Virus record (IMG/VR): IMGVR_UViG_3300009181_000033
Location: 186,001 to 250,000 of that record
DNA: 64,000 bases
Reading direction: 5' to 3' (one strand)
Positions 6,339-61,960 of this stretch are shown here, in pieces. A program made the translations under genes and the position numbers. Each line of letters opens with the position of its first letter. The stretch's first letter is position 1. The notes beneath the pieces are model-generated. The model ran no database searches. It was given only the letters and a program-made list of their open reading frames with translations, and was not told where the DNA came from.

Positions 6339-7265
6339 TTAGAGTATAGCGAAGGCCGCATCCAGCTCTTGTGGTTGGTATAAGCCGGCCAAGTTGTCTT
6401 CGATATATTGGCGAGATTCTTCAGACGCCAGATCAACACCCATTTCTTGGGCTGCTCCAATGAAATCAAAACACTTGGAAATGAAGTTTGCAATCACTTC
6501 AGGTCCAGAGCCACTAGGAGGCGGCACAGCCATTCTGCCACCTAGCGTAGCAAATCTCCTTATTGGTGTTTCTGAGACAAATCCCCAATCACCACTCATC
6601 CAAGCGTTCATTTCTTCAGAAGTGATCCTAGCATGTGCCTCGTTCATCAATCCGCCACGACTTCCCCTAGATTCCTGTGTTGCCATAATTTCAGGTTGCA
6701 CAACGCCAACACCAGCATGTGAATGTCCAGAAGACCTCATTGCCTCATCTCCAGCAAGATAATCCTTGACATGCTCGAGGTCGGTATGAGCCGAAGCCAC
6801 AAGATCTTGAACCCAACCAGGAAGCTGATCTCCGGCATCTAGAAGTTCACAAATGGTCTTGGCCATTTCCTTGATGTCGTACATGCGAGATTTAATCATG
6901 TATCCTTCATCATCCATTGGGTGCCCTGATTCATAACCATGAAGGAAGCGCTGGGGATCTTTTTCTCCCTTGGCAAGGGAAACTTCTTCCTTGATAATAC
7001 GACGGAGTTGAAGCGGAGAGAGTTTTGCTATTTTTCCTTCTGGCACAACTGGGGATTTTTGTGACTTTACCCAGCAATTAGTGCAAACATCAGGCATGTC
7101 GTCTGAAGCTCCTTGACACCAGCAAGCCTCTTGACCGCAAGACGTACACATAAAAGTTTCATCTTTGCCGTAGACACAGTCTTCTGTGTGTTGTTCGGGA
7201 ATATTCGAAACAAGTGCCATTTCTTCTTTAATAATCTTGTGGAGTTGTGATACTGTTAGCTTCAT
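6339..7265 (-). CDS. Hypothetical protein, probable head-internal protein
   Basis: N-terminal MKLTVSQLHKIIKEE and internal KLSPLQLRRIIKEE; Cys cluster. Confidence 0.65.
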   Translation of the reverse strand: MKLTVSQLHKIIKEEMALVSNIPEQHTEDCVYGKDETFMCTSCGQEACWCQGASDDMPDVCTNCWVKSQKSPVVPEGKIAKLSPLQLRRIIKEEVSLAKGEKDPQRFLHGYESGHPMDDEGYMIKSRMYDIKEMAKTICELLDAGDQLPGWVQDLVASAHTDLEHVKDYLAGDEAMRSSGHSHAGVGVVQPEIMATQESRGSRGGLMNEAHARITSEEMNAWMSGDWGFVSETPIRRFATLGGRMAVPPPSGSGPEVIANFISKCFDFIGAAQEMGVDLASEESRQYIEDNLAGLYQPQELDAAFAIL

Positions 7266-7813
7266 TGCTGTAAAACCCTTTGCTTTAGCAAGTAAACATG
7301 TCCTTCATGACGATCTTCAATGCCTTGAAGCATATTGTCCAGACCACGGGTGAGAGTTCCACACTCCTTGAGGCAGTCTGCCAAGTGAGCCATTACCTTC
7401 AAGAAGTTCATTTCAGCAAGATAGGATCGCTTTGCAAGCTCGGCAGGTGAAGGCATGGTAGTTGTCATGCCATAGTTCTTGACCAATTTCATGACCTGTG
7501 ATGTAGTCAACATAAGATCAACATTGGCGGTTGAACCAAGGCCAATTGCCTTTTCTGCCACCGTGTCTATGTCTTCGATTGTTTCCTCATATAATTTAGA
7601 GAACAATAAGTGATCCCCATAGAACGGATCACCCTTTGTTACCCAGTGGTGATTTTGATGAACAAGGGCCAAGAACTTAAGATAAACGAGAGCAACAGAT
7701 AACTGGGGGTATGGCGTCGAACCCCACTCTGAAATAAAATTGTCGGTAACAATATTAAGATTTGGCTCAACAACAATGGCCATCTCGAATGTTTCTGAAA
7801 GTCTTCTCTTCAT
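7262..7813 (-). CDS. dps: Dps/ferritin-like protein
   Basis: HHWVTKGDPFYGDHLLFSKLYEE..DTVAEK ferroxidase pattern. Confidence 0.75.
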   Translation of the reverse strand: MKRRLSETFEMAIVVEPNLNIVTDNFISEWGSTPYPQLSVALVYLKFLALVHQNHHWVTKGDPFYGDHLLFSKLYEETIEDIDTVAEKAIGLGSTANVDLMLTTSQVMKLVKNYGMTTTMPSPAELAKRSYLAEMNFLKVMAHLADCLKECGTLTRGLDNMLQGIEDRHEGHVYLLKQRVLQQ

Positions 7814-8964
7814 CACTTTAGCTCCATATTAAACCCAATGAGATTGATTGCTCCGGGATGGGGTGACCAGGAAAGCTTATATGGTTCGCCCGCCATCCTC
7901 TGCTGTGTGTTCCAAGAATCAACGTATTTATCCAATACAGTTTCAACCCTGGAATTAAAGGTAACGCCCTGGGGCAGCCTTCCAAGAACAGGAATCTGTG
8001 TCTCTTTATTGTTGCCTTCGCCAATCAAGTATTTCTTAATTCCTGCAGGCACTGTGGACTTCTTAATCCCAAACACATTTTCGGCTTTCTTGACGTAGTC
8101 CCTACTTGACAATCTGTTCTCGACCAAGGAAGAAATGGGATCATTAACATCTTCTTCGATGATGGGCATTACAGCCTCTTCAAGATATGAACCTCTACGT
8201 AACCTATTCGCCAAAGAGAACAATGAGCCTTCTCCAAGAATTGCTTCTTCACGCTCTTCGATGCAATCGTAAATTGCATCCAATAGTTTTTGACGATCAA
8301 TCTTTGCATTGGAGACAGCGGCATAGCCAGCAGAAAACCTGGTTGCCAAGGCCTCTTCCCACTGACCTTCTAAATTAGCTCCATAATCAGAGCAAAGCTT
8401 GTGAGCAATTCTCTTGTACCATTCAACCGTGTGCTCCTCTTCTTTGGGACCCTTGGCCGCATCACCCATGAGTTCACCATTCATGTCAAACGGATCTGTT
8501 ACGGGCTTTGGATCGGGAAGGCCTGCCTCTTGAAGTCTCTTGTTTTTTGCAATTAAACGAAGTGCATCATCTCCTGGATAGCGCCTGACTGACTCCTGTA
8601 CAAGGGAGTGTGGGAGACGCTTTGCAGCTGCACATCTCACCACAGAATCATTGTCGCCCAAAAATTTAACGACATGTTTCTCCGGCAAAAGCCTAGCAAC
8701 AAGCTTTCTCACATCAGGGTGTACGCTGTTGGCAACCTCCAAAAGGGTTGATAATTTAAAAGAACCTTGACGCGGAAATCTGCCGGTTCCCTCGAGGAGA
8801 TCCAAGTGTTCGTTGAAACACTTTACCAAATAACGATGACTGCCAGTCAGGGTGACAGCAGGGCCTAGAACTCTAAACATCTCATCACGAAGATTGTTTA
8901 AAGACTTTTCTTCTTTTATAGTCGTCTTAGCGACGGTCTGTAGCTCTCTAAGCTTCAGTTGCAT
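7813..8964 (-). CDS. Hypothetical protein with HEAT-like repeats
   Basis: 383-aa ORF, GGAGG RBS; HPDVRKLVARLL / DSVVRCAAAKRL. Confidence 0.6.
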   Translation of the reverse strand: MQLKLRELQTVAKTTIKEEKSLNNLRDEMFRVLGPAVTLTGSHRYLVKCFNEHLDLLEGTGRFPRQGSFKLSTLLEVANSVHPDVRKLVARLLPEKHVVKFLGDNDSVVRCAAAKRLPHSLVQESVRRYPGDDALRLIAKNKRLQEAGLPDPKPVTDPFDMNGELMGDAAKGPKEEEHTVEWYKRIAHKLCSDYGANLEGQWEEALATRFSAGYAAVSNAKIDRQKLLDAIYDCIEEREEAILGEGSLFSLANRLRRGSYLEEAVMPIIEEDVNDPISSLVENRLSSRDYVKKAENVFGIKKSTVPAGIKKYLIGEGNNKETQIPVLGRLPQGVTFNSRVETVLDKYVDSWNTQQRMAGEPYKLSWSPHPGAINLIGFNMELK

Positions 8965-9024
8965 AATTGGCTGAACTCCTCCGAATAAGTATTATGATAT
9001 TACACAATTTAGAAAAAACAGCAA

Positions 9025-9213
9025 TTATTCGCTTGTTAATTTCATGTCTTTTGCCCATTTACGTATTTTTTTCTTCACGTCATCCGGAACATAGACACTC
9101 TTTTGGATAAAAGCAGGATCATTCAATAGTTCAATTTCATAATCTTCTTCAGGGTGTGAGCCGCCCAGACTTTCCCGTATCATCTTTCGAAGCTGTCCAA
9201 TTGTTATTTGCAT
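9025..9213 (-). CDS. Small hypothetical protein with shared N-terminal motif
   Basis: MQITIGQLRKMIRESL; ATATTTA 4 nt upstream. Confidence 0.6.
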   Translation of the reverse strand: MQITIGQLRKMIRESLGGSHPEEDYEIELLNDPAFIQKSVYVPDDVKKKIRKWAKDMKLTSE

Positions 9214-9223
9214 CAAATAAATA

Positions 9224-9748
9224 TCATGGATTTAAAAAGAAATTGTCCCAATCGTTGTGCCAATTCAAAGTTTTTGAATTTTCCCAAAAATGCGCGACCT
9301 TGGGTTCAGTTGGATTCTTTTTTAGTGACATTCCTGTTTCAGAAAGAGACCTGTGTCCTTTTTGTGAATTGCATCTCTTACAAGAAGCCACACAGTTTTT
9401 CCAAGATGTTGTTCCACCTTTGCACCGTGGAACGACATGATCGACAGTTATTGAAACCCAATCCAATTTGGCAAAGCAATATTGGCACTGCCAATTATCT
9501 CGATTAAAAAGAACTCTCTTTCTAAATCGAGGTGCGGAATATCTTCTATTTACTCTTTCAAGAAGTCTAACAGTAACTGGAACGGCATAGCTTTTTGTCG
9601 AAGTTGTTAATTGATCATCCCAAAAACTTGGATTTTCTCCTGTCGAAATAACCTCGGCACGGCCCTTGAATAATAAATTAAGGGCTCTTATTCCACTTAC
9701 AAAGTTTAGTGGCATCCAGTCTGAATTGAGAAGAAGAACCTTTTTCAT
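9224..9748 (-). CDS. HNH endonuclease (McrA-like)
   Basis: RDNWQCQYC..TVDHVVPRCKGGTTSWKNCVASCKRCNSQKG. Confidence 0.9.
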   Translation of the reverse strand: MKKVLLLNSDWMPLNFVSGIRALNLLFKGRAEVISTGENPSFWDDQLTTSTKSYAVPVTVRLLERVNRRYSAPRFRKRVLFNRDNWQCQYCFAKLDWVSITVDHVVPRCKGGTTSWKNCVASCKRCNSQKGHRSLSETGMSLKKNPTEPKVAHFWENSKTLNWHNDWDNFFLNP

Positions 9749-10256: not shown

Positions 10257-11189
10257 TTACTTGATCTGAATGGATTCGAGCTCGTCAAGAGTTATGAGGA
10301 CATTCATGAGCGACTCGGCCTCCTCATCTTTGATACCCAGGGACTTTTGTAGATCTTCAAGAAAATCCCCAAATTTCTTCTTAGCTTTTTCAACCCTGGG
10401 GTCGGCCTTCTCGCTTTCTTCCCTGAGCAATCCTGCTAGCTTTTGCCAACGTTCGACAAGAACAACGGGACGTTCACTCTGTGTTCTCTTGCTGCGAAGA
10501 GAACTTTGCACAGCTCTGAGAATATCAGCAGCGGTCGGTCGACCTCCTCCTTCAGCTTGCATATGCTTGTTTTGAAGAAGCCAATCAATGACCTTTGTCG
10601 CTAATCCAGGATCAGCTTTTGCCTGTTTTGCAACGGCCGCAGCAAGGACCTTCGAAGCCTTGGGAACATCAACTTTCTTTTCAGATGCTTGCTCTTTAGC
10701 TTTTTCTGCATCTTGCCCAGAAGCTTCCGCTGCTGCGGCCGCAATTGTTGGAACGGCTTCTTCTTGTTTGCTTGGATCAATAGGAGTACCTGGCTTGATG
10801 CCTGATCCCCCTGCTTTTCCTTCGTCAGTGCCAGCATCATTGTTGGGCTTTGCGTTAGCGATCTCCGCGGCAGCTGGGGCTCCAGCACCGTCAAGAACAC
10901 CCTTCAAAAACAGGGCAACATCCCCATCAGAAATGCCGGCCTTTTGAGCAACGCCCTTTAATTCCTCCACTCCCTTAGTTATGTCATTCTTTGCAGAGTC
11001 AAATTGTCTCTGGTGAGCCTTGTCAGCAATCGCTTTGCCCAGGCTTTTGCCTACATCAACTCCACCACCAAGCCAGCTCTTGACTTTGTCCAAAAATCCA
11101 ACTTCAACGAGCTGTTGACGTTGGAGAGATGTTATGTTTCCCTCTAGCATAAATTGATAAAGTTTGTAATCTAAAGCTGCCTTGTTCAT
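10257..11189 (-). CDS. Ala/Lys-rich hypothetical protein, possible head-internal protein
   Basis: 310-aa ORF, AGAGG RBS; contains VERWQKLAG motif. Confidence 0.65.
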   Translation of the reverse strand: MNKAALDYKLYQFMLEGNITSLQRQQLVEVGFLDKVKSWLGGGVDVGKSLGKAIADKAHQRQFDSAKNDITKGVEELKGVAQKAGISDGDVALFLKGVLDGAGAPAAAEIANAKPNNDAGTDEGKAGGSGIKPGTPIDPSKQEEAVPTIAAAAAEASGQDAEKAKEQASEKKVDVPKASKVLAAAVAKQAKADPGLATKVIDWLLQNKHMQAEGGGRPTAADILRAVQSSLRSKRTQSERPVVLVERWQKLAGLLREESEKADPRVEKAKKKFGDFLEDLQKSLGIKDEEAESLMNVLITLDELESIQIK

Positions 11190-14833: not shown

Positions 14834-14861
14834 GATATTAAGTATTGCACAGACTGATTAA

Positions 14862-16607
14862 TCAACCACATTTTGAAGTGCCACATGAAGAACACGTAAC
14901 GCACCCCTCCTTATAGACCAATCCTTCGACCCCACAAGAAGCACACTTCTTATCTGAAGTTGAAATTGTTCCATCAGGAATGTGACATTTCAAAACCCTG
15001 GCAATGACCTTGGAGAAGCTTCCCATATCGCTGTGCTTATCCTTTTGTAGCTGCTCCACAAGATATTGAATAGGGACTCCATGCCTGAGAGATAGAGAAA
15101 GTGTCCTTGTGAAAGCACCATGCAAGGGATTTGCGAATAGCTCAACTACATCCTTGAAGATGAGATTGTCGTCTTCACCCACAGGAATAGAAAGATTATA
15201 AGTTGAAACGCCGTCTCGCTTACCATTCTTAATGAGTGTTCCATTTTTCACCTTCTTAGGAACTTCAACGTGGGAGGAAAGGCCGCAGAACAACTCATAA
15301 GGCTTATCATCCAGCTTGCCAACCAAAACCAGATATGTCTCGGGACCATTAGAGCCCTTAAGATTAATCCTGTGAATATCACATGGAAGTTCCTTTGGTC
15401 TCTTTGGTGCATGATGCTCAGCCATCTTCTGGGGCTGACCATCTATGGTAGTTTCCTTGGGGGTGTCCTGGACTAGAACGCCTGTCCTGCAGCCATCGCG
15501 ATAGACTGTAAATCCTTTGCAGCCTGATTCCCAGGCTTTCATGTAAACATCTGCAACGACCTCACGAGAAACATCATTTGGCAGGTTACAAGTTTTTGAG
15601 ATCGCATGACAAACCCATCGCTGGGCGACTGATTGGAGCTTGACAGACATTGGCCAATCAACATCATTCGATGTTGCCTTCCAATAAGGTGAATTCTCCA
15701 CCTTGTCTTCCCCTCCAGTAACATCCATCCACTTCTTGAAACCATGGTGATAAACTTTATACTCTTGCCACTTATCGCCCAAATGATCAACAAAGTCGAC
15801 CCTTGAATCCACATCAGCAGAAGTTATCTTCTTGCGGCGCTTATAGGAAAGAAGATAAGCAGGCTCGATGCCGCTGGTAGTTTGAGTAAGACAAGAAACA
15901 GAGCCTGCAGGCGCTGTTGTTGTCAAAGCAATATTTCTTCGACCATATTTCTTCCAATTATCCACAATGGAAGCATCAGCCTCCATTATCCTCTGAAGGA
16001 AAGAGCTCTTGGTCTCAGCCTCCCACTCGTAAGCTGGGAATGAACCTCGATCCTTCGCCATGTCCACAGAAGAACGATAGGCTGAAAGAGTAAGGGTCTT
16101 ATAAATCTTCTCTGTTAGATCAACGGAGTCCTGAGAGCCATACCTGACATTCAGTGAAGCGATTGCATCACCAAGACCTGTGATTCCAAGCCCAGTCCTT
16201 CGAGCACCAGATGCCGCATCCTTAATCTTAGTCCAAAGATTAATTTCTGCTCTCTTCACATCAGCGCTCTCAGGATCTTCACTGATCTTATTCAGGATGG
16301 CATCAACAGCTTCAATCTCAAGATCAACGAGATCGTCCATTAGCTTTTGAGCCTTCTTAGAAACATCCGTGAACCTCTCGTAATCAAAGACAGGGTTGCT
16401 GCTAAAGGGTTCCTTAACAAACTTCGTAAGATTGACAAGCAAAAGTCGACATGAATCGTAGGGACTGAGGATCAACTCAGCGCAATTATGAACCAAAAGA
16501 CCATTCGCAAAAAAATTATGAACATCATCTACAGTGAGATCATAAACATCTTCGTTGTCAACGTTTTCAATAGTATCAATTTCATCCCAAAACGCTTGTT
16601 CAATCAT
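14862..16607 (-). CDS. nrdJ: Ribonucleotide reductase (class II-like) piece 3: 41-aa IntC plus C-terminal extein
   Basis: VYDLTVDDVHNFFANGLLVHN|CAELIL; RRTGLG, TTAPAGS, TTSGIEP, AISKTCNLP, KGFTVYRDG; C-terminal Zn ribbon. Confidence 0.93.
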   Translation of the reverse strand: MIEQAFWDEIDTIENVDNEDVYDLTVDDVHNFFANGLLVHNCAELILSPYDSCRLLLVNLTKFVKEPFSSNPVFDYERFTDVSKKAQKLMDDLVDLEIEAVDAILNKISEDPESADVKRAEINLWTKIKDAASGARRTGLGITGLGDAIASLNVRYGSQDSVDLTEKIYKTLTLSAYRSSVDMAKDRGSFPAYEWEAETKSSFLQRIMEADASIVDNWKKYGRRNIALTTTAPAGSVSCLTQTTSGIEPAYLLSYKRRKKITSADVDSRVDFVDHLGDKWQEYKVYHHGFKKWMDVTGGEDKVENSPYWKATSNDVDWPMSVKLQSVAQRWVCHAISKTCNLPNDVSREVVADVYMKAWESGCKGFTVYRDGCRTGVLVQDTPKETTIDGQPQKMAEHHAPKRPKELPCDIHRINLKGSNGPETYLVLVGKLDDKPYELFCGLSSHVEVPKKVKNGTLIKNGKRDGVSTYNLSIPVGEDDNLIFKDVVELFANPLHGAFTRTLSLSLRHGVPIQYLVEQLQKDKHSDMGSFSKVIARVLKCHIPDGTISTSDKKCASCGVEGLVYKEGCVTCSSCGTSKCG

Positions 16608-27236: not shown

Positions 27237-27521
27237 TTACTTCCATGTGACGAAGTTCTTCTTTTTCTTCTTCAGCTTGCCACCAGGAGAAACAGGATCT
27301 TTGCCCATGTCCTCAGCACCAGCACCAAGCGGACCTGTGAAACCAGCAACGCCGCCGGCAACGCTCATTTCATCCACTTCCTCTTCCTTGTCCTTGGTTT
27401 TTTCTTCCGAGTCCTTTGATTTCCGATTTGACTTTGATGGAATTAGCTGGTTTGGCGCACGGGGATTGTTGATCTCCGTGGCCAAAATCTCAGCTATGTA
27501 TTTCCTAAGCACTTCGTTCAT
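27237..27521 (-). CDS. Small hypothetical protein
   Basis: MNEVLRKYIAE; ATATTTA 5 nt upstream. Confidence 0.6.
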   Translation of the reverse strand: MNEVLRKYIAEILATEINNPRAPNQLIPSKSNRKSKDSEEKTKDKEEEVDEMSVAGGVAGFTGPLGAGAEDMGKDPVSPGGKLKKKKKNFVTWK

Positions 27522-27537
27522 GGAAATAAATATTCGC

Positions 27538-28164: not shown

Positions 28165-28416
28165 TCAATAGCTTCCATATGAAGAGCCAGAATAGCTGTC
28201 GGAATATTGATCAGCTGGCGCACTGTCGCCACTTTTCTTTAAGGAACTCTCGTACTTTGAACCACTTACAGGCCCATAATATTCCTCGTTGCCCATATCG
28301 TCTGTCAAATACAGATCGTCTCCCCTGCGAACGATCCTTGATCCGGAATATTCCAGCAGGGTCTTGGAAACTTCTTCTCTGATGATTCTTCTTAGTTGAT
28401 TGATCGAAATTCGCAT
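28165..28416 (-). CDS. Small hypothetical protein with shared N-terminal motif
   Basis: MRISINQLRRIIREEV..LLE. Confidence 0.65.
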   Translation of the reverse strand: MRISINQLRRIIREEVSKTLLEYSGSRIVRRGDDLYLTDDMGNEEYYGPVSGSKYESSLKKSGDSAPADQYSDSYSGSSYGSY

Positions 28417-45668: not shown

Positions 45669-45694
45669 GGCACAAATATACCACAGCCTACGAA
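45657..45694 (-). promoter_or_regulatory. Start-occluding hairpin containing extended -10
   Basis: TTCGTAGGCTGTGGTA-TATTTG-TGCCATGGCCTACGAA: 16 pairs incl. 3 G-U; TGGTATATT 6 nt before ATG. Confidence 0.75.
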
Positions 45695-45717
45695 GTTGTA
45701 TAATCCAGTTGGCAGTG

Positions 45718-46515
45718 TCATTGTGTTGAAAAATGATGGGCATCGTGACATGCAACACACAATACGACACCAGAAACGTCTTGCTTCAAGTGGTAATCTG
45801 ACACCCACTCCGCTATCATCGACTTCCTCTCAAACGAATCACCAGGCTCACCCAGCTCGGCAATCGCGCGGTGCAAGATAGATGCGAATCTCTCCTCGTT
45901 GTGGTGCACCTCCAGGTCCCTCGTTCCTCCACACTTAGAACAACGAAATCCACTCGCTTTCAACTTCGGATACACCCAACTATTGTAAATATGTGATCTA
46001 ACGAGTGGTTGCAAAGCTGAAGTGCCATCCCTCCATTGAGAATGTGCCGAGCCAGTTAACGGCGTGATAATTCCAGTTTGCCATTGATCTCTCATTTTTT
46101 GAGATTTCCTAATCTTTTCGGACGTCGAATTGTAAGCGGCTTCTGAAATTTTTGCAAATACAGGATCATTCTCTTTTGATTTACCACGATTCCAAGGATT
46201 TCTGCTCCACAATCCTTCATCACGACGCTTCTTAAGGCTTTTTTCCTGTGCGCTCTTATTGTGCCCCCAATTATTGTGAACACGTGCTGCATGACCAAGA
46301 ACGTATTCCGAATATCCTTTCTGAAGAGTTACGAATTTCGTTGTCTCACCACAACCACAAGCACAAGTAGGTTCTTTTCCGTCTGGAAAGAATAGCATAC
46401 AATACAGGTCTTTGGTTGGTAGATTGTGTCGCTTTTGACAATGGATCCTCATCGAATCCAATTTAGAAGTTTCATACTCACCGCAAACCGGGCACTTAAA
46501 AGTCGAAGGGTCCAT
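45718..46515 (-). CDS. HNH homing endonuclease with Zn-finger N-terminus
   Basis: CPVC..HCQKRH, CACGCG, PWNRGK, CSKCG..LEVHH..LCVACH. Confidence 0.8.
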   Translation of the reverse strand: MDPSTFKCPVCGEYETSKLDSMRIHCQKRHNLPTKDLYCMLFFPDGKEPTCACGCGETTKFVTLQKGYSEYVLGHAARVHNNWGHNKSAQEKSLKKRRDEGLWSRNPWNRGKSKENDPVFAKISEAAYNSTSEKIRKSQKMRDQWQTGIITPLTGSAHSQWRDGTSALQPLVRSHIYNSWVYPKLKASGFRCSKCGGTRDLEVHHNEERFASILHRAIAELGEPGDSFERKSMIAEWVSDYHLKQDVSGVVLCVACHDAHHFSTQ

Positions 46516-51900: not shown

Positions 51901-52013
51901 AGGGCAGTGCCAACAATGCCTGCTGGCGTTCCGACGGGTGCTCGGGCCACTGGACCCGAGATGTCTATCTCTCTTGTTGTTACTCCTGCACTACCGAATT
52001 TCAACTGTGCCAT
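48939..52013 (-). CDS. Tail sheath protein (gp18-like), copy A
   Basis: GVTTREID, GPAFVP, PWFAPAGFTRG, WGQKTLQ..SALDRVNVRRLL. Confidence 0.93.
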   Translation of the reverse strand: MAQLKFGSAGVTTREIDISGPVARAPVGTPAGIVGTALNGPAFVPVTVGTIGDWYNKFGETDGKKFGPLAVFEWLRNAQAVTYLRVLGTGDGRERTDDGTVTNAGFVVGDNVPNPLSGVPGTKERNPFANNLGVAGRTYFLGCFMSESAGSTVFSEAGIQGYKSAVAAAAGSHAAAVPIVRGVLMAPSGVILTLSSSVAGISSAQPGSALVALQANIKGSQLGDVVLGNNASPKQEFSMFLNGHQGLTASYPNIITASFDVTSNNYFANVLNTDPNKIQEAGHYLYANWDIHPVLAAVTGTAVVESTAGAGATGTGKEQAAFLVTGSTARNYFDPNRIVPNYENFQDRFGHAKSPWFISQKFGGKPINLFRFHALDDGVGPAYQYKISIENLTPSNDPMNKYGNFTVVLREFNDRDLDKKTIANETFSGVNLDPSSDRYIAKVIGDIHAYYDFDREESAQKMVIQGNYENRSNYVRVEVHPDVENGFVDPVALPIGFRGIDHLVTSGSSPLSSSLKAVENAVLTVDSVFNHVVTPPLPFRKKITINDVDSAKENVEPKFYWGVQFEHPQTVLRQNGSILPNDGIKSFGKYYPDFAGFLTGSNSGQPDTAQLGIVDSDRFCNNMFSLEHLQVVTGTTGDADSNQWKSAVYVRDGNIISNNTNKTRALRVDDFLTNKSFVKYTTFMQGGFNGVNIFDKDSEEINNTAVHADMGATTNRGAENGPNVKAYMKAIEIMKNVVNMDIQLLAIPSIREPIVTDAAILAVEERFDAMYVMDIEQLDENYEQVEDEDQIPSVVNTINNFKNRTVDSSFAAAYFPDVLYRDPKGINVQAPPSVLVLGALALNDAVGHPWFAPAGFTRGALPQEALEPRVRLKQKDMDSLYDNSINPIVAFPGSAQSGTNPRGGIVVWGQKTLQVAASALDRVNVRRLLIEIRRQVRDIANTILFEPNRAATLARFSASVTPRLQRIQALSGLERFKVIIDSSTTTQDDIENNTIRGKIFVQPTKSIEFVSLDFVVANNLAQVQ

Positions 52014-52057: not shown

Positions 52058-55000
52058 TCACACGAACTCAACGCCACTATTTGTAACAATGAAATCAATT
52101 GCGATGAACTCGACAACCCTTGTGGGAACAACGACTATTCTTCCATTCAGGCGATTGAGATCGACATCTTCTTGGGTGTTATTGCTCTCATTCATAACAA
52201 CCTGGAAGGCTTCTACGCCGGCCTGAATTTGAATGAGACCCAACTGGAAAGAAGCATCGGCAACAAACTTATTACGAACGGCTGGCGTGTTTTGCTCGAA
52301 CACTATGTTCTTTGCAATACCGGAAATGATTCTCTTTATCTCCAGCATCAACCTTCTCACGTTGACCCTATCAAGAGCCGAACGATTAATTTGTAGCGTC
52401 TTTTGACCAAAGATAACGAAACCCATCTTGGGGAAAGTGGCTATCGGATTGATGCGTGATTCGTAGAGGCGGTCCCTGTCAGAAACATTTAGTCTCACGC
52501 CGACATTTGTTACGAAGTCCAACGCTGCCCTGTTGAAACCAGCAGGGGCAAACCAAGGATAAGAAACTCTGTCGTTAAAGCCCAAAGCACCCAAGGCAGC
52601 AACTGAGGCCGGAACCCTTACTTTTCTCTTGTTGACGGTGTCATCGACAAAGACATCAGGATAGTATGTCGCAACGTAATTATTGTCAATGGTCCTTGCA
52701 TCAAGTTGATTTGCTGTGCGCACTATGTTTGGTTTGACACTTGAATCATCATAAATGACTGCGTCATCATCGCTATATGAAGGAATGTCCATCACGTGCA
52801 TGGCCATTCCATAATCCCTAACCTTCTGCATGGTTCTGTCATTTATGTATACATCCCTGATACCTGGTATACAGATGATGTTCGTGTTCGCCTCGAGCGG
52901 GTTGGTCATTATGTCAACGGCGGACAAGTAAGAATTAACACCGTTGTTGTCTTCGTTAAAGCCAGACGGATTGACAGTGCCAAAACCTTCTGGATAGAAA
53001 GTTGGTGATGCACCTGAATCGAAAGAAACTGACTTATCATTCAATCGACGAGCGTTTCTATCCAAGAAATTGGTTCCATCAAATCCACCATACATGAAAT
53101 TGGTGAACTTGGCATAAGCGGAGAACCTATTGAATTCAGAGGCGGTCCCTTGGGACAGCAACGTTGCGAAAGTAATTCTGTCTATCTGAGAAGTCCCATC
53201 ATTGTTTAACACGTACGTGCTAGAGTCAAGTTTGGCATTTCTCACGTAGGCTGCCTGCCTCATGTGACTGTTCACCGAACTTGTGAGATCTGTGATTGAA
53301 GAGTTGTAGAACGCGACATTTGCCAATGAGAACTTATTATTGTTCATGTCGTCGGCAAAAGATCCCGTCAACAACGAGTCTAGTTTCGATATTCCAACAA
53401 ACTTGGTAAATGACTCGAGCAGAGAATTTTTCTCTGTGACAAGGTTGGCGTTTAACAACATGTTGTTTTTGACATCATTGGTGACGTCAGAACCAGTGCT
53501 GCTTCTCTCAAACTTAACGCCCCAATAGTAGGCTGGATTTGCTTGCTCTGCAGCACCAGGCTCACCGGTAAACGTTGGGGTTTGTTTCACTTCACCTCTT
53601 GTAACCTTGAACCTAAGGGGGAGAGGTGGGAGGAAAGAACCAGACAGTGATGTTCCGGCAGAAGAAGAACAATGCAGTCTTGAAGCAGAAGGATCGAGAG
53701 CACCATCGTTGGTCAAGGGGCTGGTTTTCAACAACTCTGGACCCCTGAATCCGAACGGAAGAGCGGTGGTTGGAATTTGCTCTTTTTCGTGCTCTTCGCT
53801 CATCTCAATTCTGACGTATCTTGAATTATTTGCATACTTGCCAAGGGCAACGATTCTCTTCTCGTTAGGATCAAGAGAATCAAAGTTATAGAAAACTTTT
53901 CTATCTCCGATCATCTTGGCTATGTAATTTGGAGCCTTTGGATCCAAGGTGACATTTGAAAATTGTTCGAGAACCATAGGGCTCACGTCGGTATCGTTCC
54001 AGTCCCTTATTTGAACATTGAACGTTCCATACTTGTTTGCTTCATTTGCAGACGCCTTGACGTTTGTGATAGAAATCTTGTAAAGGCTGTTTGCATATTG
54101 ACCATCGTCCAACGACTCGAACCTAAAAAGATCGTATTCTTTTGTTCCATACGGTTGTGATATAAAGAATGTGCTCTTGGGCGTGGTGTATCTCGTGTTG
54201 TAAGAACCAAACACCTTGCTAAATGGATTTCCGTGAAGACCGTCAGCGGAAGAACCGCTGAGTATCGCCACAGAGTTTCCTGCATCAACGTATGCAATTG
54301 TGTGATCAACAGCAAAATCTGCGTGTAGATAATGTTGTTCTTGATAGAACTTGTCAGGATCCCTGTTTAGAACCTTGGCAAAATAATCCTTGTCTGTTGG
54401 GTTGAATGAAGCGGTTAAAACCTTCACGCCGGAAAGTCCATCCATTTTTGAGAATGAATCACCTATGGAAGAAGAGATGATGAGTTTAAATTTCCCATCG
54501 GAGTGCATTGGGTGATCGTCGTTATTAACAACCTTCACTGCCACCAAGCTAGAATTGGATCCCGTAACCATGATTCTTGCTGTAGAGGGCGTCATGATGA
54601 GGCCTCTTATCAAGTCGGCAGATGTAGAATTTGTTATGGTGTCATTGTTGGTAAAATCAGCAACTGCAACGTCTTCATTGGGTCCAAACGTATGTTTGGC
54701 AGCCAAAAACTGAACCCTTCCAGTAGTTGAATCGTCCAAAACAAAGCCGGCATTATTGACAACACCTTTTGTCAAAGTATCACTCAGGTGTTGAGCTGTA
54801 GTGTTGGCTCCTGCACCCAGCACCCTGAGATATGTCAAGGATGATCTGTTCTTTAAAAATTCGCAAACCGCGTATGGTCCAAAATGCTTTGGATCAAGAT
54901 TGCCAAAGTTTTGCACAAATTCATTAAAATTTGCTACAGTAAATGGCACAAAGGCGGGGCCTTTGTTTGATGTTCCTATGATTCCTGCAGGGACGCCTAC

Positions 55001-55078
55001 TGGTCCAGATGTCCTGGGTGATGATAAATCTATTTCGCGTTCATAAAAATTTGGCGACTTAAAGGTCTGCTCTGACAT
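52058..55078 (-). CDS. Tail sheath protein (gp18-like), copy B
   Basis: SPNFYEREID, GPAFVP, PWFAPAGFNRA, FGQKTLQ..SALDRVNVRRLM. Confidence 0.93.
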   Translation of the reverse strand: MSEQTFKSPNFYEREIDLSSPRTSGPVGVPAGIIGTSNKGPAFVPFTVANFNEFVQNFGNLDPKHFGPYAVCEFLKNRSSLTYLRVLGAGANTTAQHLSDTLTKGVVNNAGFVLDDSTTGRVQFLAAKHTFGPNEDVAVADFTNNDTITNSTSADLIRGLIMTPSTARIMVTGSNSSLVAVKVVNNDDHPMHSDGKFKLIISSSIGDSFSKMDGLSGVKVLTASFNPTDKDYFAKVLNRDPDKFYQEQHYLHADFAVDHTIAYVDAGNSVAILSGSSADGLHGNPFSKVFGSYNTRYTTPKSTFFISQPYGTKEYDLFRFESLDDGQYANSLYKISITNVKASANEANKYGTFNVQIRDWNDTDVSPMVLEQFSNVTLDPKAPNYIAKMIGDRKVFYNFDSLDPNEKRIVALGKYANNSRYVRIEMSEEHEKEQIPTTALPFGFRGPELLKTSPLTNDGALDPSASRLHCSSSAGTSLSGSFLPPLPLRFKVTRGEVKQTPTFTGEPGAAEQANPAYYWGVKFERSSTGSDVTNDVKNNMLLNANLVTEKNSLLESFTKFVGISKLDSLLTGSFADDMNNNKFSLANVAFYNSSITDLTSSVNSHMRQAAYVRNAKLDSSTYVLNNDGTSQIDRITFATLLSQGTASEFNRFSAYAKFTNFMYGGFDGTNFLDRNARRLNDKSVSFDSGASPTFYPEGFGTVNPSGFNEDNNGVNSYLSAVDIMTNPLEANTNIICIPGIRDVYINDRTMQKVRDYGMAMHVMDIPSYSDDDAVIYDDSSVKPNIVRTANQLDARTIDNNYVATYYPDVFVDDTVNKRKVRVPASVAALGALGFNDRVSYPWFAPAGFNRAALDFVTNVGVRLNVSDRDRLYESRINPIATFPKMGFVIFGQKTLQINRSALDRVNVRRLMLEIKRIISGIAKNIVFEQNTPAVRNKFVADASFQLGLIQIQAGVEAFQVVMNESNNTQEDVDLNRLNGRIVVVPTRVVEFIAIDFIVTNSGVEFV

Positions 55079-58311: not shown

Positions 58312-58506
58312 TTAAATATCATCAATGATTTCTTTGACAAAGAGACGAAGCAAATTTTCCTTCACGATGTCATCGTCATCGTCGTTTTCTTTGCCGCTTT
58401 TTACTAAAGTAAGACGAGCAGTTGGCGGCAAATAAGCCATTCCACCACCTCGCGAATCACCAAGTTTTCTTTTGATTATATCTCTTCGACTCTTCTTTTT
58501 TGGCAT
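58312..58506 (-). CDS. Small hypothetical protein
   Basis: 64 aa; ATATTTA upstream; C-terminal LLRLFVKEII. Confidence 0.55.
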   Translation of the reverse strand: MPKKKSRRDIIKRKLGDSRGGGMAYLPPTARLTLVKSGKENDDDDDIVKENLLRLFVKEIIDDI

Positions 58507-58520
58507 GGCGCCAATAAATA

Positions 58521-58742
58521 TTACATTCCTGCGATTAATGCCTGAACAGCAGTTGAGACTCGTTCCTGCAACTCCCTCGGCAAAGCAGAAAGAAGAACAT
58601 AATTCTCTGCCTTTGTTGTGTCTTGAGGCATTCCACCAGCCATATAATCAGAATTTGTTTTTACAATGGCCCTAATTACCAAAGGCGGTAATCCCACCCT
58701 AGTTGAATAAATCGGTTGATATAAATCTACTTTATTTTCCAT
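58521..58742 (-). CDS. Hypothetical protein
   Basis: 73-aa ORF with GAGGA RBS. Confidence 0.55.
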   Translation of the reverse strand: MENKVDLYQPIYSTRVGLPPLVIRAIVKTNSDYMAGGMPQDTTKAENYVLLSALPRELQERVSTAVQALIAGM

Positions 58743-60166: not shown

Positions 60167-60184
60167 TAGATGTTCTCCTATAAA

Positions 60185-60212
60185 AAGGACGGGAACTTTC
60201 GTTCCCGTCCTT
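60185..60212 (-). terminator. Intrinsic terminator
   Basis: 12-bp stem AAGGACGGGAAC/GTTCCCGTCCTT, GAAA loop, T-run on minus strand. Confidence 0.8.
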
Positions 60213-60241
60213 GCCACATGTCAAAGCAAAATTAATATATT

Positions 60242-60514: not shown

Positions 60515-60583
60515 TTCTATTTCTCCTGGACTTAATCGTCCTTGATGGTTGAACTTTAGTGCACGCACTGTCATATGTTCAAA

Positions 60584-60623
60584 AAAATAAATCGAGCGGC
60601 ATTTCTACCGCTCGATTTATTTT
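60584..60623. terminator. Intrinsic terminator
   Basis: 16-bp IR AAAATAAATCGAGCGG/CCGCTCGATTTATTTT. Confidence 0.8.
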
Positions 60624-60635
60624 CACATCTTCAAA

Positions 60636-61619
60636 TCACTTGATAATTCCAGCCAGCTTCTGCCAACGCTCAACAACAACAGAGCCATCTCTCTGATAGC
60701 CCGAAGTCTGTTGTTTCTTTTTATCTCCCTTTTCACCAGTCAAAGCATTGACTTCGGGTGAATATGGGGGATTGATGTCCATTTTTCCTGATTCAATGTC
60801 TTTCTTCACTGCAGCCAACTCACTTGGCTCGATTGCCGGCATGTCAACCTTGGGCGGCATCCATCCTTCAACAGCCCTAGTGTCTGCTGTGGAGGCCCAA
60901 TTTTCTTTGACATGTTCAGCTGCGGCCTCGAGCGTATCAAACCCATTAGCCTGGAATGCTTTAAGGATTTCTTCAGGCACAGGAAGGAACTTTCCTCCCT
61001 TGGAGGCCATCTCCACAAACTTATCTGCGACAGCTTCTGGTGTGAGTGAATCAAGATCAGTGTCAGAAGGCTTGCCTTTTCCACCGTGAGCAGCTGTCCA
61101 AACATTAAGAACACCAACCAATTGCTTGCCAGGAAGATCAATCTGCAAACCACCGACTGAAGCGCTGGGGTCAACCATCAGGGTGGCTGCCCAGCGATGA
61201 TGGCCGTCCATGATGTGATTGTCATTAGAAATAATGGCCCCCAAATCACCACCAGCTCCGCCGCTGAAGCTTCCCATCTTACCCATCATTTGAATGGCCA
61301 TTCCAACAAATTTGCCAAAGTCCATGGTTGTTTGGGTTGCTCTCAAGCTGTCAGCAGGTGAATTTGTCTGGCCGCCGGAAGCAACATCGTCCTCGGCATC
61401 TTCGTCTTCTAGTCCTTTTGAAGCCAAGGCCTTTGCGATAGAAGGATCAACTTGACTCAGGTTCGTAGGGAAAAGACTAGGGTCAATTTTAGCAGGTGAA
61501 GCATCCTCAAACAACGACAAAAGAGAGCGAGAATGCCCCTTGGGGGAACGTATTTCCTTCAAAGCTTTTCTTGCTTCAGATGCTATCAAATTTCTCAGTT
61601 GTAATTCTGTCAATCTCAT
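60636..61619 (-). CDS. ParB/Srx-like domain protein with shared N- and C-terminal motifs
   Basis: IISNDNHIMDGHHRWAA; MRLTELQLRNLIASE; VERWQKLAGIIK. Confidence 0.7.
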   Translation of the reverse strand: MRLTELQLRNLIASEARKALKEIRSPKGHSRSLLSLFEDASPAKIDPSLFPTNLSQVDPSIAKALASKGLEDEDAEDDVASGGQTNSPADSLRATQTTMDFGKFVGMAIQMMGKMGSFSGGAGGDLGAIISNDNHIMDGHHRWAATLMVDPSASVGGLQIDLPGKQLVGVLNVWTAAHGGKGKPSDTDLDSLTPEAVADKFVEMASKGGKFLPVPEEILKAFQANGFDTLEAAAEHVKENWASTADTRAVEGWMPPKVDMPAIEPSELAAVKKDIESGKMDINPPYSPEVNALTGEKGDKKKQQTSGYQRDGSVVVERWQKLAGIIK

Positions 61620-61960
61620 TTCTTCTTTTCCTCTCCGTCCTCAGACGAAACCTTCTTCAAAACGTTCATGGCCTTAACAGTGTCCTCCGGAGAAGCCTGC
61701 ATCAGCTTGGCAAAAATATCACCAAACACGGAATTGTCGAGGCTGTTTCTCTTTCCAGCCCGTAGATTGGAAACAGCGGTCTTCAACTTGCCAACATCTG
61801 CTCCCAAAGCGTCTGCCATTTTTTTAATATCAACATTGCCTTCAACATCAGCGGTCTCGCCACCCACCTTTGTTGGGCCGGCCTCAAAAATATTGTGGAG
61901 AGTCATCTTTTGCTTTTCTGATTCAACTAATTTTCTCAAAAGTCTGGCCGTTAATTTCAT
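61616..61960 (-). CDS. Hypothetical protein with shared N-terminal motif
   Basis: MKLTARLLRKLVESE; ATATTTA 5 nt upstream. Confidence 0.6.
   Translation of the reverse strand: MKLTARLLRKLVESEKQKMTLHNIFEAGPTKVGGETADVEGNVDIKKMADALGADVGKLKTAVSNLRAGKRNSLDNSVFGDIFAKLMQASPEDTVKAMNVLKKVSSEDGEEKKK

What the first reader, a model, noticed from the sequence alone, without database searches (positions are those of the whole stretch)
6339..61960. Shared N-terminal motif on unrelated proteins: candidate capsid-targeting signal
Seen: MKLTVSQLHKIIKEE (7265, with an internal second copy), MQITIGQLRKMIRES (9213), MRISINQLRRIIREE (28416), MRLTELQLRNLIASE (61619), MKLTARLLRKLVESE (61960); weaker at 8964, 27521 and the C-terminus of 58312-58506. 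Most lie behind ATANTTA. Known: T4 internal proteins have a short N-terminal capsid targeting sequence removed by the prohead protease after (I/L)xE. Inference: a modular tag that loads diverse cargo, including a ParB-like domain, into the head.
Basis: partly seen in the sequence, partly recalled or inferred. Interest (0 to 1): 0.65.

Follow-up and report, generated by a model that had tools for sequence, protein, structure and literature searches.

The report
Shared head-loading tag on phage proteins
A 15-residue N-terminal peptide (MKLTxxQLRRIIKEE) is shared by many otherwise unrelated proteins of an uncultured 298-kb freshwater T4-like phage and thousands of relatives. It most likely addresses them to the assembling head and is then cut off by the head protease, like a much-expanded version of the phage T4 capsid targeting sequence.

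Summary
A profile of the motif finds 18 places in the 297,894-bp genome above a reversed-sequence control. All lie on the coding strand: 15 at an N-terminus, one about 30 residues in, one internal, one behind a doubtful start. Conservation is in the peptide, not the DNA: the invariant Leu8 uses all six Leu codons.

The cargo is unrelated: 157 tagged proteins fall into 133 BLAST clusters. The tag is widespread but undescribed: 7,670 cluster representatives, 11-35 copies in other complete genomes, no Pfam or PHROG family, and no paper containing it.

The genome has a T4-type head module just right of the window. It holds terminase, portal, an S77/gp21 protease, a gp23 capsid protein, and tag-like small proteins beside the protease. 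All five motif-bearing records at least 90% complete encode the S77 protease.

The tag ends in (I/L)-x-E, the T4 gp21 cleavage motif. In the 327-aa family an invariant Glu38 separates a variable leader from the conserved domain.

There are no virion, cleavage or expression data. The ParB-like call is weak (fold Z about 5). I rate it a new variant of a known kind.

The parts
6339..7265 (-). 308-aa protein with the tag at residues 1-15 (7221-7265). It appears to be an in-frame fusion of at least two tagged modules: a Cys-rich module (residues 1-79), a second module (80-175) and a C-terminal part.
   Evidence: Translation. HMM score 37.6 bits. Residues 81-175 align with residues 2-94 of stand-alone 98-101-aa tagged proteins L094 and L052, E 2e-29 and 4e-23.
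6981..7028 (-). Internal second copy of the tag (AKLSPLQLRRIIKEEV, residues 80-95), which keeps the I-K-E site.
   Evidence: (25.3 bits).
7813..8964 (-). 383-aa protein with a loose tag-like N-terminus (MQLKLRELQTVAKTTIKEE). It is a candidate prohead-core or internal protein.
   Evidence: It does not score above the control in the HMM scans. It has 13 [IL]xE sites against 4.2 expected, p=4e-4, fourth in the genome. ATACTTA lies 21 nt upstream.
9025..9213 (-). 62-aa tagged protein (MQITIGQLRKMIRES), with the tag at 9169-9213.
   Evidence: 37.4 bits. ATATTTA at 9218-9224 ends 4 nt before the ATG (1 nt before the in-frame TTG).
28165..28416 (-). 83-aa tagged protein (MRISINQLRRIIREE), with the tag at 28372-28416.
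   Evidence: 41.4 bits. Only close homologues of 83-91 aa turn up in the word search.
60636..61619 (-). 327-aa tagged protein. It has a leader helix (residues 5-24), a flexible linker with the invariant Glu38 (LFE|D, codon 61506-61508), a globular ParB/Srx-like domain (about residues 41-295), and a C-terminal ERWQKLAGIIK (60639-60671).
   Evidence: 27.7 bits. 271 homologues with variable leaders that all end hydrophobic-x-E before 'DADPxKID'. E38 and D138-W143 are invariant in 85 sequences. AF2 model pLDDT 91. Fold matches to ParB/Srx at Z 3.7-5.2. No Pfam or PDB sequence hit.
61616..61960 (-). 114-aa tagged protein (MKLTARLLRKLVESE), with the tag at 61916-61960. It is the first gene of a two-gene tagged operon, about 2.5 kb from the capsid-protein gene.
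   Evidence: 35.9 bits. ATATTTA at 61966-61972, 5 nt before the ATG.
27237..27521 (-). 94-aa protein with a loose resemblance (MNEVLRKYIAEI...). Its Y-I-A-E matches the T4 IPIII ending F-I-A-E. Membership is doubtful.
   Evidence: It does not score above the control. ATATTTA at 27527-27533.
58312..58506 (-). 64-aa protein whose C-terminus loosely resembles the tag. I do not accept it as a member.
   Evidence: No HMM hit above the control. ATATTTA at 58515-58521.
10257..11189 (-). 310-aa protein with an internal copy of the second portable peptide (ERWQKLAGLL, near 10451).
62887..64000 (-). 3' part of a 483-aa HNH homing-endonuclease gene that separates the tagged operon from the gp23-type capsid gene. 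The head module continues to the right of the window (genome 250439-262927).

Best explanation

Proposed mechanism:
1. Tagged genes are transcribed together with the structural genes.
2. The tag is basic (pI about 11), amphipathic and helical. It binds the acidic scaffold or core on which the T4-type prohead is built, so the attached protein is enclosed when the gp23-type shell closes.
3. The S77 (gp21-type) prohead protease then cuts after the Glu of the terminal (I/L)-x-E, at Glu14, and at further such sites in longer leaders (for example LFE38 in the 327-aa protein). This frees the mature cargo inside the head.
4. In-frame fusions that carry internal tags would be cut into separate cargoes in the same way.
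5. The cargo is mostly small, acidic and hypervariable. It is probably ejected with the DNA and acts early in the host, as T4 IPI does against restriction.

Shown here: the motif exists, sits at the N-terminus, is conserved at protein level, and carries unrelated cargo. The head and protease are T4-type and co-occur with the tag. Tag-like copies lie inside the head module. The (I/L)-x-E ending and the invariant boundary Glu are present. The 327-aa protein has a helix, linker and domain architecture.

Inferred: binding to the core, cleavage, retention in the virion, ejection, and late timing.
For: 1. Sequence statistics: 4 matches against 0.07 expected in the window. There are 18 HMM hits above the reversed control, all on the coding strand: 15 at an N-terminus, one about 30 residues in, one internal, one behind a doubtful start.

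2. Peptide-level selection: Leu8 uses six codons and Arg9 uses both AGR and CGN. Third-position identity is 0.44 against amino-acid identity 0.58, and upstream DNA identity is 0.29.

3. Portability: a degenerate DNA pattern with no start codon in it found more than 120 IMG/VR loci. Of 176 matches, 161 have Met exactly three codons upstream. The 157 unique proteins form 133 cargo clusters. Cargo includes YkuD and AAA_33 domains and a ParB/Srx-like fold.

4. T4-type head: S77 protease E=1e-25, 31% identical to T4 gp21 with GELDHP and SSRG conserved. Gp23 MCP E=1e-64. Portal and TerL.

5. Position: tag-like 81-aa, 137-aa and 106-aa proteins lie next to the protease and portal. In relatives with estimated genomes of about 180 kb, a tagged gene sits between portal and protease, where T4 has genes 67 and 68.

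6. Co-occurrence: S77 is present in 25 of 44 motif contigs of at least 45 kb and in 5 of 5 that are at least 90% complete. The 19 negatives are 13-58% complete and carry neither a gp23-type nor an HK97-type capsid gene.

7. Cleavage logic: (I/L)-x-E ends at residue 14 in 13 of the 18 hits, and at residues 13-15 in 15. This matches the gp21 motif L/I-x-E (PMC9026906). T4 leaders read from NC_000866 have the same form: MKTYQEFIAE, MLKEQLIAE, MAKINELLRE.

8. In 85 homologues of the 327-aa protein the leaders differ, but Glu38 at the leader/domain boundary is invariant. The AF2 model gives helix 5-24, a low-confidence linker 25-40 and a domain with pLDDT 97-98.

9. [IL]xE is most enriched in the proteins flanking the protease and in the scaffold-position protein. 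The capsid protein has four such sites in its first 60 residues, including I13-R14-E15.

10. ATANTTA is enriched 12-21 fold upstream of starts. It precedes both sheath genes and the scaffold-position gene, and none of DnaE, DnaB or RNR. There is a weak gp55 homologue.

11. The 327-aa tagged protein shares its last 11 residues with the scaffold-position protein.
Against: - There is no direct evidence. No cultured phage carries the tag: T4 and Microcystis phage Mel-JY01 have none, and only the uncultured record LR756508.1 has 14. So no virion proteome exists, and no RNA runs hold the sequence.
- The tag has no detectable similarity to the T4 CTS, so the link is by analogy and context.
- The specificity of this S77 homologue is unknown.
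- (I/L)-x-E is a short motif, about 1 per 92 residues genome-wide.
- Tagged genes are scattered among replication and tail genes in this genome, not confined to the head module.
- The 689-aa 'scaffold' is assigned only by position, acidity and [IL]xE content, with no family hit.
- The IMG/VR set was picked with a pattern that forces T4, Q7, I11, I12, E14 and E15, so conservation at those positions in that set is circular. N-terminality and cargo diversity are not.
- In one related lineage (L144) the N-termini are less uniform.
Confidence: 0.62

Rival explanations
1. The tagged proteins are themselves assembly components: extra scaffold or core subunits that co-assemble through the shared helix. 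They would be degraded and expelled at maturation rather than delivered as cargo. The tag would then be a core-assembly helix, not a loading signal for effectors.
For: Tag-like N-termini occur on the small proteins next to the protease, where T4 has the core proteins gp67 and gp68. The cargo is strongly acidic like the scaffold: median pI 4.84 against scaffold pI 4.65. Several are rich in [IL]xE.
Against: There are 133 unrelated cargo clusters, and some carry enzyme-like domains (YkuD, AAA_33, ParB/Srx-like) that make no sense as scaffold. Up to 35 hypervariable copies per genome is the pattern of an arms-race arsenal, not of a structural part. Most small tagged proteins have only the one site at the tag.
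Confidence: 0.15
2. The peptide has a role unrelated to the capsid. It could be a basic amphipathic helix that binds nucleic acid, a host factor or a membrane, or an oligomerisation or regulatory module shared by a class of small phage proteins. Its link with T4-like phages would then only reflect ancestry.
For: The tag is basic and amphipathic (pI about 11, hydrophobic moment 0.67). Tagged genes are scattered through the genome, including among replication genes. There is no direct evidence for packaging. The complex prediction gave no answer.
Against: This does not explain the strict N-terminal position (161 of 176). It does not explain the constant (I/L)-x-E ending and the invariant boundary Glu, or the tag-like copies inside the head module beside the protease. 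It does not explain why a tagged protein shares its C-terminus with the scaffold-position protein. The tag has no hydrophobic core for membrane insertion or secretion (mean hydrophobicity -0.58).
Confidence: 0.15
3. The similarity is selected at the nucleotide level: a translation-initiation, promoter or recombination cassette at the 5' ends of genes. The peptide would be a by-product.
For: T-even internal-protein loci are thought to shuffle through conserved flanks. AT-rich ATANTTA elements lie just upstream of several tagged genes.
Against: Synonymous codons vary freely: six Leu codons at position 8, and AGR and CGN Arg codons at position 9. Third-position identity (0.44) is below amino-acid identity (0.58). 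The 30 nt upstream are unrelated (0.29). An internal copy is kept in frame inside a fusion protein.
Confidence: 0.02

Closest known systems
Capsid targeting sequence (CTS) of phage T4 internal proteins IPI, IPII, IPIII and Alt (Mullaney and Black 1996, as reviewed in PMC9026906, PMC3012670, PMC5694885)
   Same: Both are short N-terminal peptides shared by otherwise unrelated, hypervariable proteins. Both start M-K and end hydrophobic-x-Glu, the gp21 cleavage motif. Both phages have a T4-type prohead with a gp21-family protease, a gp23-type capsid protein and a gp20-type portal. In both, the genes are scattered and partly tandem, and the leaders of the core and shell proteins have a related form (T4 gp22 MLKEQLIAE, gp24 MAKINELLRE; here the capsid protein's MKYFSLDQLAQGIRE).
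   Different: There is no detectable sequence similarity to MKTYQEFIAE: the tag profile finds nothing in T4. The tag is 15 residues, not 10, and is strongly basic. It is far more conserved across distant genomes and far more expanded: at least 16 per genome here and up to 35 in relatives, against about 4 in T4. It also occurs as internal copies in fusion proteins. Its function is untested.
Propeptides of head, inner-body and ejection proteins of giant phages phiKZ, 201phi2-1 and SPN3US (Thomas et al., reviewed in PMC9026906; PMC5694885)
   Same: In these giant phages, many head-internal proteins are processed by a gp21-related protease after Glu. Paralogues can share identical N-terminal residues (SPN3US gp53 and gp54). 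Propeptides carry several cleavage sites.
   Different: Those phages cleave at S/A-x-E, and their propeptides are mostly longer than 100 residues and are not one common short tag. They have virion RNA polymerases and a distant protease. Here the protease is a clear Pfam S77 member, the P3 residue is Ile or Leu, and the head module is syntenic with T4.
T4 prohead core proteins gp67, gp68 and the scaffold gp22
   Same: Small proteins encoded beside the protease gene. The neighbouring core and scaffold-position proteins are rich in L/I-x-E sites. Their location in the head module matches.
   Different: No sequence similarity was found; PHROGs gives no hit for the 81-aa, 137-aa, 285-aa or 689-aa proteins. 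Here these proteins share their N-terminal form with dozens of non-core proteins.
ParB/Srx (sulfiredoxin) fold superfamily, as the cargo domain of 60636-61619
   Same: The eight best structural matches are all ParB/Srx-type: sulfiredoxin, Atu1540, KorB, PadC, SerK, SbnI and pNOB8 ParB-N. They cover residues about 79-186, around an invariant DGHHRW motif.
   Different: Z is only 3.7-5.2 and the Foldseek E-value is 0.03 or worse. No Pfam ParBc hit in any of 85 members and no PDB sequence hit. The protein has an extra helical domain of about 110 residues and a scaffold-like C-terminus.

Membership tests
T4-type capsid targeting sequence / internal-protein propeptide system | A short N-terminal peptide (10-20 aa) common to otherwise unrelated proteins of one phage | tested here: met
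   15 tagged N-termini in this genome. 133 cargo clusters among 157 tagged proteins. 161 of 176 copies in IMG/VR are exactly N-terminal.
T4-type capsid targeting sequence / internal-protein propeptide system | The peptide ends in the prohead-protease site L/I-x-E | tested here: met
   (I/L)-x-E ends at residue 14 in 13 of the 18 hits, and at residues 13-15 in 15. Glu38 at the leader/domain boundary is invariant in 85 homologues. Only the sequence motif was tested, not cleavage.
T4-type capsid targeting sequence / internal-protein propeptide system | The phage builds a T4-type prohead: gp21-family protease, gp23 capsid protein, gp20 portal and an internal scaffold core | tested here: met
   PF03420 E=1e-25. 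PF07068 E=1e-64. Portal and TerL PHROGs. 31% identity to T4 gp21. The scaffold is assigned by position and composition only.
T4-type capsid targeting sequence / internal-protein propeptide system | Sequence homology to the T4 CTS (MKTYQEFIAE) | tested here: not met
   The tag profile A1 finds no match in the T4 genome at E<=1. T4 leaders read share only the general form.
T4-type capsid targeting sequence / internal-protein propeptide system | The tag is necessary and sufficient for packaging into the prohead and is removed during maturation; the mature proteins are in virions | not testable with these tools
   No cultured carrier. No RNA or proteome data. The complex prediction gave no verdict.
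T4-type capsid targeting sequence / internal-protein propeptide system | Late (structural-gene) expression | tested here: inconclusive
   ATANTTA is enriched 12-21 fold upstream of starts and is shared with the sheath and scaffold-position genes. There is a weak gp55 homologue. There are no expression data, and only about half of the tagged genes have the element directly upstream.
ParB/Srx superfamily (cargo of 60636-61619) | Match to Pfam ParBc or related models | tested here: not met
   No family at E<=0.1 for the protein. None in 85 homologues. A PDB profile search found nothing.
ParB/Srx superfamily (cargo of 60636-61619) | ParB/Srx fold with the conserved Arg-containing motif | tested here: inconclusive
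   The top eight VIA-align matches are all ParB/Srx-type, but Z is 3.7-5.2 and the Foldseek E-value is at best 0.03. DGHHRW is invariant.
phiKZ-like inner-body or ejection-protein propeptides | Cleavage motif S/A-x-E and long (>100 aa) propeptides | tested here: not met
   The P3 residue is Ile or Leu and the leaders are 14-38 residues. The protease is a clear Pfam S77 member, 31% identical to T4 gp21; whether phiKZ-type markers such as virion RNA polymerases are present was not examined.
Sec/Tat signal peptides | A hydrophobic core after a short basic N-region | tested here: not met
   The tag is charged throughout, with mean hydrophobicity -0.58 and an amphipathic moment of 0.67.

The most novel reading that the evidence does not exclude
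A large uncultured clade of T4-like phages, in freshwater and other habitats, uses one nearly invariant 15-residue label to load an arsenal of up to about 35 different small acidic proteins per genome into the capsid. That is about a tenth of the genes. Some are loaded as tag-cargo-tag-cargo polyproteins that the head protease cuts apart. The label alone would then pick out thousands of injected effectors from sequence (7,670 clusters at 50% identity), many of them likely anti-defence proteins. A second portable peptide, ERWxKLAGIxK, is shared with the scaffold-position protein and would mark a separate shell- or scaffold-binding route.
Probability: 0.4. Interest if true: 0.8.

Novelty: new variant of a known kind. 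Interest (0 to 1): 0.7.

Why it matters
The T4 capsid targeting sequence is the textbook case of a phage address label for injected proteins, and it is used to package foreign proteins. It has been regarded as a feature of T-even phages with three or four cargoes.

If this tag works the same way, the principle is much older and far more widely used. It is a strongly conserved label on thousands of hypervariable proteins, with dozens per genome.

That would turn an open question into a sequence search: which proteins do uncultured phages inject with their DNA? It would yield a large candidate set of early-acting anti-defence proteins. It would also provide a second, orthogonal packaging tag for engineering T4-like capsids.

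Tried and rejected
- Pfam and PHROGs on the tagged proteins gave no family for the tag, and mostly none for the cargo.
- The word-index protein search with the 83-aa protein returned only close homologues; the tag alone is too short for that tool.
- tblastn of tagged proteins against cultured-phage records found no cultured carrier, only the uncultured record LR756508.1. The tag profile confirmed 14 copies there and none in T4 or Microcystis phage Mel-JY01.
- Full-text searches for the motif strings and for related concepts found no paper describing it.
- Complex prediction of the 689-aa scaffold-position protein with the 62-aa tagged protein gave no verdict (score 0.00). This is not evidence either way.
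- The sequencing-run search found only freshwater DNA metagenomes and no RNA, so expression timing could not be examined and read laying was not used.
- I looked for lineage-specific alternative tags in the contig of a ParB/Srx-like orthologue with a different leader (L144). Its N-termini are helical and end in hydrophobic-x-E, but there is no crisp common tag. In L143 the standard tag and a different leader coexist on adjacent genes, so strict 'one tag per lineage' is rejected.
- The 19 S77-negative contigs carry neither a gp23-type nor an HK97-type capsid gene. They are uninformative fragments rather than counter-examples.
- The nucleotide-level explanation is rejected on codon variation.
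- A secretion-signal explanation is rejected on composition.
- One mistyped call (28) and two parameter errors produced nothing.

Full report
WHAT THE WINDOW IS

The window is bases 186001-250000 of a single 297,894-bp virus record with direct terminal repeats, judged complete. GC content is 43%. The only sequencing runs that hold it are freshwater metagenomes.

Most genes lie on the minus strand. Recognisable ones in the window are:
- a DnaE-type polymerase with a Hint insert;
- a ribonucleotide reductase with an intein;
- a DnaB helicase;
- two tandem tail-sheath paralogues of about 1,000 aa;
- a giant tail protein;
- HNH homing endonucleases.

Immediately to the right of the window lies a T4-type head module on the same strand. 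In order it contains:
- large terminase (genome 261299-262927);
- a 106-aa protein;
- a portal of 1,042 aa with an HNH insert;
- a 285-aa protein;
- a Peptidase_S77 prohead protease (PF03420, E=1e-25);
- proteins of 137 and 81 aa;
- two paralogues of about 175 aa;
- an acidic 689-aa protein in the scaffold position (pI 4.65, no family hit);
- a Gp23-type major capsid protein (PF07068, E=1e-64).

The protease is 31% identical to T4 gp21 over 169 residues and keeps the His (GELDHP) and Ser (SSRG) motifs. The order matches T4 genes 20-67-68-21-22-23.

CHECK OF THE OBSERVATION

- A degenerate DNA pattern for the core finds 4 sites in the window, against 0.07 expected from shuffles.
- Over the whole genome, a strict regular expression finds 11 sites. 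All are on the minus strand and 10 lie directly behind Met.
- Two profile HMMs find 18 sites above the best score of a reversed-sequence control. The two weakest lie in doubtful ORFs.
- Five strong copies lie outside the window, mostly as adjacent pairs (genome starts 47800; 57385 and 57687; 86912 and 87446).
- Weaker but above-control copies include three in or beside the head module: the 81-aa MKLTNTMLRKIILQE, the 106-aa MPKIELDRLKKIIREE, and a 398-aa protein whose copy sits about 30 residues in.
- The related 137-aa MKLSKFELKNIVKEC scores below the control.

The conservation is in the peptide. The invariant Leu8 uses all six Leu codons and Arg9 uses AGA, AGG, CGT and CGA. Third-position identity between copies (0.44) is below amino-acid identity (0.58), and the 30 nt upstream are unrelated (0.29).

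HOW WIDESPREAD IT IS, AND WHAT IT IS ATTACHED TO

Of the 176 matches, 161 have Met exactly three codons upstream, so the peptide is N-terminal almost everywhere. The consensus is MKITKRQLRRIIKEE.

The proteins are small (median 110 aa) and are often in tandem arrays. After the first 18 residues are removed, 157 unique proteins fall into 133 BLASTP clusters, 116 of them singletons. The few recognisable domains are unrelated to each other: a YkuD L,D-transpeptidase, an AAA_33 P-loop kinase-like domain, and weak EF-hand hits.

A 30-column profile of 70 N-termini (A1) matches 7,670 representatives of 50%-identity clusters at E<=0.001, among 1.84 billion proteins.

The top scorers carry two or three copies. 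In 142 of 150 one copy is at residue 1, and 107 of 159 internal copies still begin with Met. These are in-frame fusions of neighbouring tagged genes.

The window's 308-aa protein is such a fusion. Its residues 81-175 align to residues 2-94 of stand-alone tagged proteins of about 100 aa.

Other complete or near-complete genomes carry 11, 17, 23, 27 and 35 copies, largely in arrays of 8-13 kb.

No Pfam or PHROG family covers the tag, and no paper in the library contains the motif strings. Among cultured-phage records it was not found. T4 and Microcystis phage Mel-JY01 have none, while the uncultured 484-kb record LR756508.1 has 14.

LINK TO THE T4-TYPE HEAD

Among 44 motif-bearing contigs of at least 45 kb that could be searched, 25 encode an S77 protease. 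That includes all five that are at least 90% complete. The 19 without it are 13-58% complete and carry no capsid gene of either the gp23 or the HK97 type, so they are fragments that miss the head module.

In several contigs a tagged gene lies within 1-2 kb of the protease gene. In relatives with estimated genomes of about 180 kb the order is terminase, portal, 272 aa, 183 aa, tagged 112-128 aa, 95 aa, protease. There the tagged gene sits where T4 has genes 67 and 68.

In the window itself, the tagged pair 61960/61619 lies about 2.5 kb from the capsid gene on the same strand, separated from it by a homing endonuclease and two small genes.

CLEAVAGE LOGIC

The reviews describe T4 as follows. T4 gp21 cuts after Glu in L/I-x-E. 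The 10-residue N-terminal CTS of IPIII is sufficient for packaging and is then removed. Core proteins are cut many times, and propeptides often hold several sites (PMC9026906, PMC5694885, PMC3012670).

Read from the T4 record, the leaders are:
- IPII and IPIII: MKTYQEFIAE;
- gp22: MLKEQLIAE;
- gp24: MAKINELLRE;
- gp21: MNEPQLLIE.

In this genome, (I/L)-x-E ends at residue 14 in 13 of the 18 profile hits, and at residues 13-15 in 15.

The 327-aa protein has 271 homologues. Their N-terminal leaders differ in length and sequence, for example MKLTESQLRRII..., MKKILNEQQLRKHIADE..., MENWRRFVNE, MKLRKLIE and ...RLQKLAGILKE. Every one ends hydrophobic-x-Glu directly before the conserved start of the domain (DADPxKID). 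That Glu (E38) is invariant in an 85-sequence alignment.

The AlphaFold2 model (mean pLDDT 91) shows a leader helix at residues 5-24, a low-confidence linker at 25-40, and a compact domain with pLDDT 97-98.

Genome-wide, [IL]xE is most over-represented in four proteins:
- the 285-aa protein beside the protease (12 sites against 3.1 expected);
- a 148-aa protein just upstream of a tagged pair;
- the 689-aa scaffold-position protein (19 against 7.5);
- window 7813-8964 (13 against 4.2).

The capsid protein has four such sites in its first 60 residues. They include I13-R14-E15, within a tag-like MKYFSLDQLAQGIRE, and L58-K59-E60, near the position that corresponds to the T4 gp23 maturation site.

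PROMOTER-LIKE ELEMENT

ATACTTA and ATATTTA are enriched 21-fold and 12-fold in the 40 nt upstream of starts. ATANTTA lies within 60 nt upstream of 52 genes (55 sites). These include both sheath genes, the scaffold-position gene, the 81-aa head-module protein and several ORFs of 778-1,702 aa. None of DnaE, DnaB or RNR has it.

It often ends only 4-8 nt before the ATG. A weak homologue of the T4 late sigma factor gp55 exists (E=7e-4). This fits late expression but does not show it.

THE CARGO CALLED ParB-LIKE

No Pfam model matches any of 85 family members, and a PDB profile search finds nothing.

Structure comparison gives only weak matches, but they are consistent. The eight best VIA-align rows (Z 3.7-5.2) and the best Foldseek rows (E 0.03-0.5) are all ParB/Srx-type folds. 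They cover residues 79-186, around an invariant DGHHRW. I rate the ParB/Srx assignment as plausible but not established.

OTHER FEATURES THAT BEAR ON THE MECHANISM

The tag is basic (pI about 11) and amphipathic. The cargo is acidic: median pI 4.84, with 82% below pI 6, against 36% of this genome's ORFs of 50-300 aa. The scaffold-position protein is acidic with long Asp/Glu runs. An electrostatic, helix-mediated attachment of the tag to the core is therefore plausible.

A second portable peptide, ERWxKLAG(I/L)xK, ends three proteins: the scaffold-position protein, the tagged 327-aa protein and a 303-aa protein elsewhere in the genome. It also occurs internally in window 10257-11189. In some orthologues of the 327-aa family the same sequence sits in the N-terminal leader.

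So one tagged protein shares its last 11 residues with the presumed scaffold. This is independent circumstantial support that it resides in the head.

INTERPRETATION

The best explanation is a T4-CTS-like address label and propeptide (confidence about 0.6).

Steps shown: the motif is real, N-terminal, portable and selected at the peptide level. The genome has a T4-type head and protease, and these co-occur with the tag. Tag-like copies lie in the head module. The cleavage-type ending and the invariant boundary Glu are present.

Steps inferred: binding to the core, cleavage, retention in the virion and ejection, and late timing.

Rivals:
- The tagged proteins are expendable core subunits rather than delivered cargo (0.15).
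- The helix has a role unrelated to the capsid (0.15).
- It is a nucleotide-level cassette (0.02, contradicted).

By function and context this is the same kind of system as the T4 CTS. It is not a sequence relative of it, since the homology test was not met. It differs in length, charge, conservation and scale. I therefore file it as a new variant of a known kind, not as a member of the T4 CTS family in the narrow sense.

LIMITS

The IMG/VR set was chosen with a pattern that fixes several tag positions. Only its N-terminality, codon usage, cargo diversity and context are unbiased.

Only the best 150 of the 7,670 profile hits could be inspected, and these are enriched for multi-copy proteins.

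The complex prediction returned no verdict.

Noticed in passing
window 60639-60671; window about 10451 (in 10257-11189); genome 252353-254422 and 165413-166324: A second portable peptide, ERWxKLAG(I/L)xK, ends the scaffold-position 689-aa protein, the tagged 327-aa protein and a 303-aa protein. It occurs internally in a 310-aa protein. In some orthologues of the 327-aa family the same sequence (RLQKLAGILKE) sits in the N-terminal leader instead. It could be a shell- or scaffold-binding peptide.
   Followed up: partly
window 6339-7265; proteins P0126-P0275: Proteins with two or three tags are common and look like in-frame fusions of neighbouring tagged genes; 107 of 159 internal copies still begin with Met. 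They may be polyproteins that the head protease cuts apart.
   Followed up: partly
IMG/VR records behind L040 (G019), L032 (G015), L053 (G026), L035 (G016), L002 (G002): Other complete or near-complete genomes carry 11-35 tagged genes, mostly in tandem arrays of 8-13 kb. In two of them the arrays lie at the ends of the record. The window's own genome has fewer copies, and they are scattered.
   Followed up: partly
whole genome; in the window e.g. 9218-9224, 61966-61972, 14839-14845: The ATANTTA element often ends only 4-8 nt before the ATG. If it is a -10-like late promoter, the mRNAs would be nearly leaderless. AGATTAA and GTGCAAA are also enriched upstream of starts (11-fold and 9-fold) and were not examined.
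   Followed up: partly
window 2-2485, 14862-16607; genome 257774-260902: Self-splicing or mobile inserts sit in essential genes: a Hint domain in DnaE, an intein in ribonucleotide reductase, and an HNH-endonuclease insert in the portal protein.
   Followed up: no
window 44004-45770 and 62887-64000 (continuing to genome 250338): There are two paralogous HNH homing endonucleases (phrog_3339). One lies directly after the major capsid gene, as segD does after gene 23 in T4.
   Followed up: no
window 48939-52013 and 52058-55078: Two tandem tail-sheath paralogues of about 1,000 aa, roughly twice the usual length, with large inserts before the conserved C-terminal domain.
   Followed up: no
tagged proteins of IMG/VR loci and of this genome: After removal of the basic tag, the cargo is markedly acidic: median pI 4.84, with 82% below pI 6, against 36% of this genome's small ORFs.
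   Followed up: yes
L055:6258-7055 (-) and L096:1749-2465 (-): The tag is fused to a YkuD L,D-transpeptidase domain and to an AAA_33 P-loop kinase-like domain. The AAA_33 protein lies directly upstream of the protease gene in one contig (L048).
   Followed up: no
window 7262-7816: A 184-aa protein between two tagged genes matches a PHROG 'DNA binding protein' family (phrog_3636, E=2e-12) and, more weakly, a starvation-inducible regulator family. It is co-oriented with and overlaps the tagged 308-aa gene.
   Followed up: no
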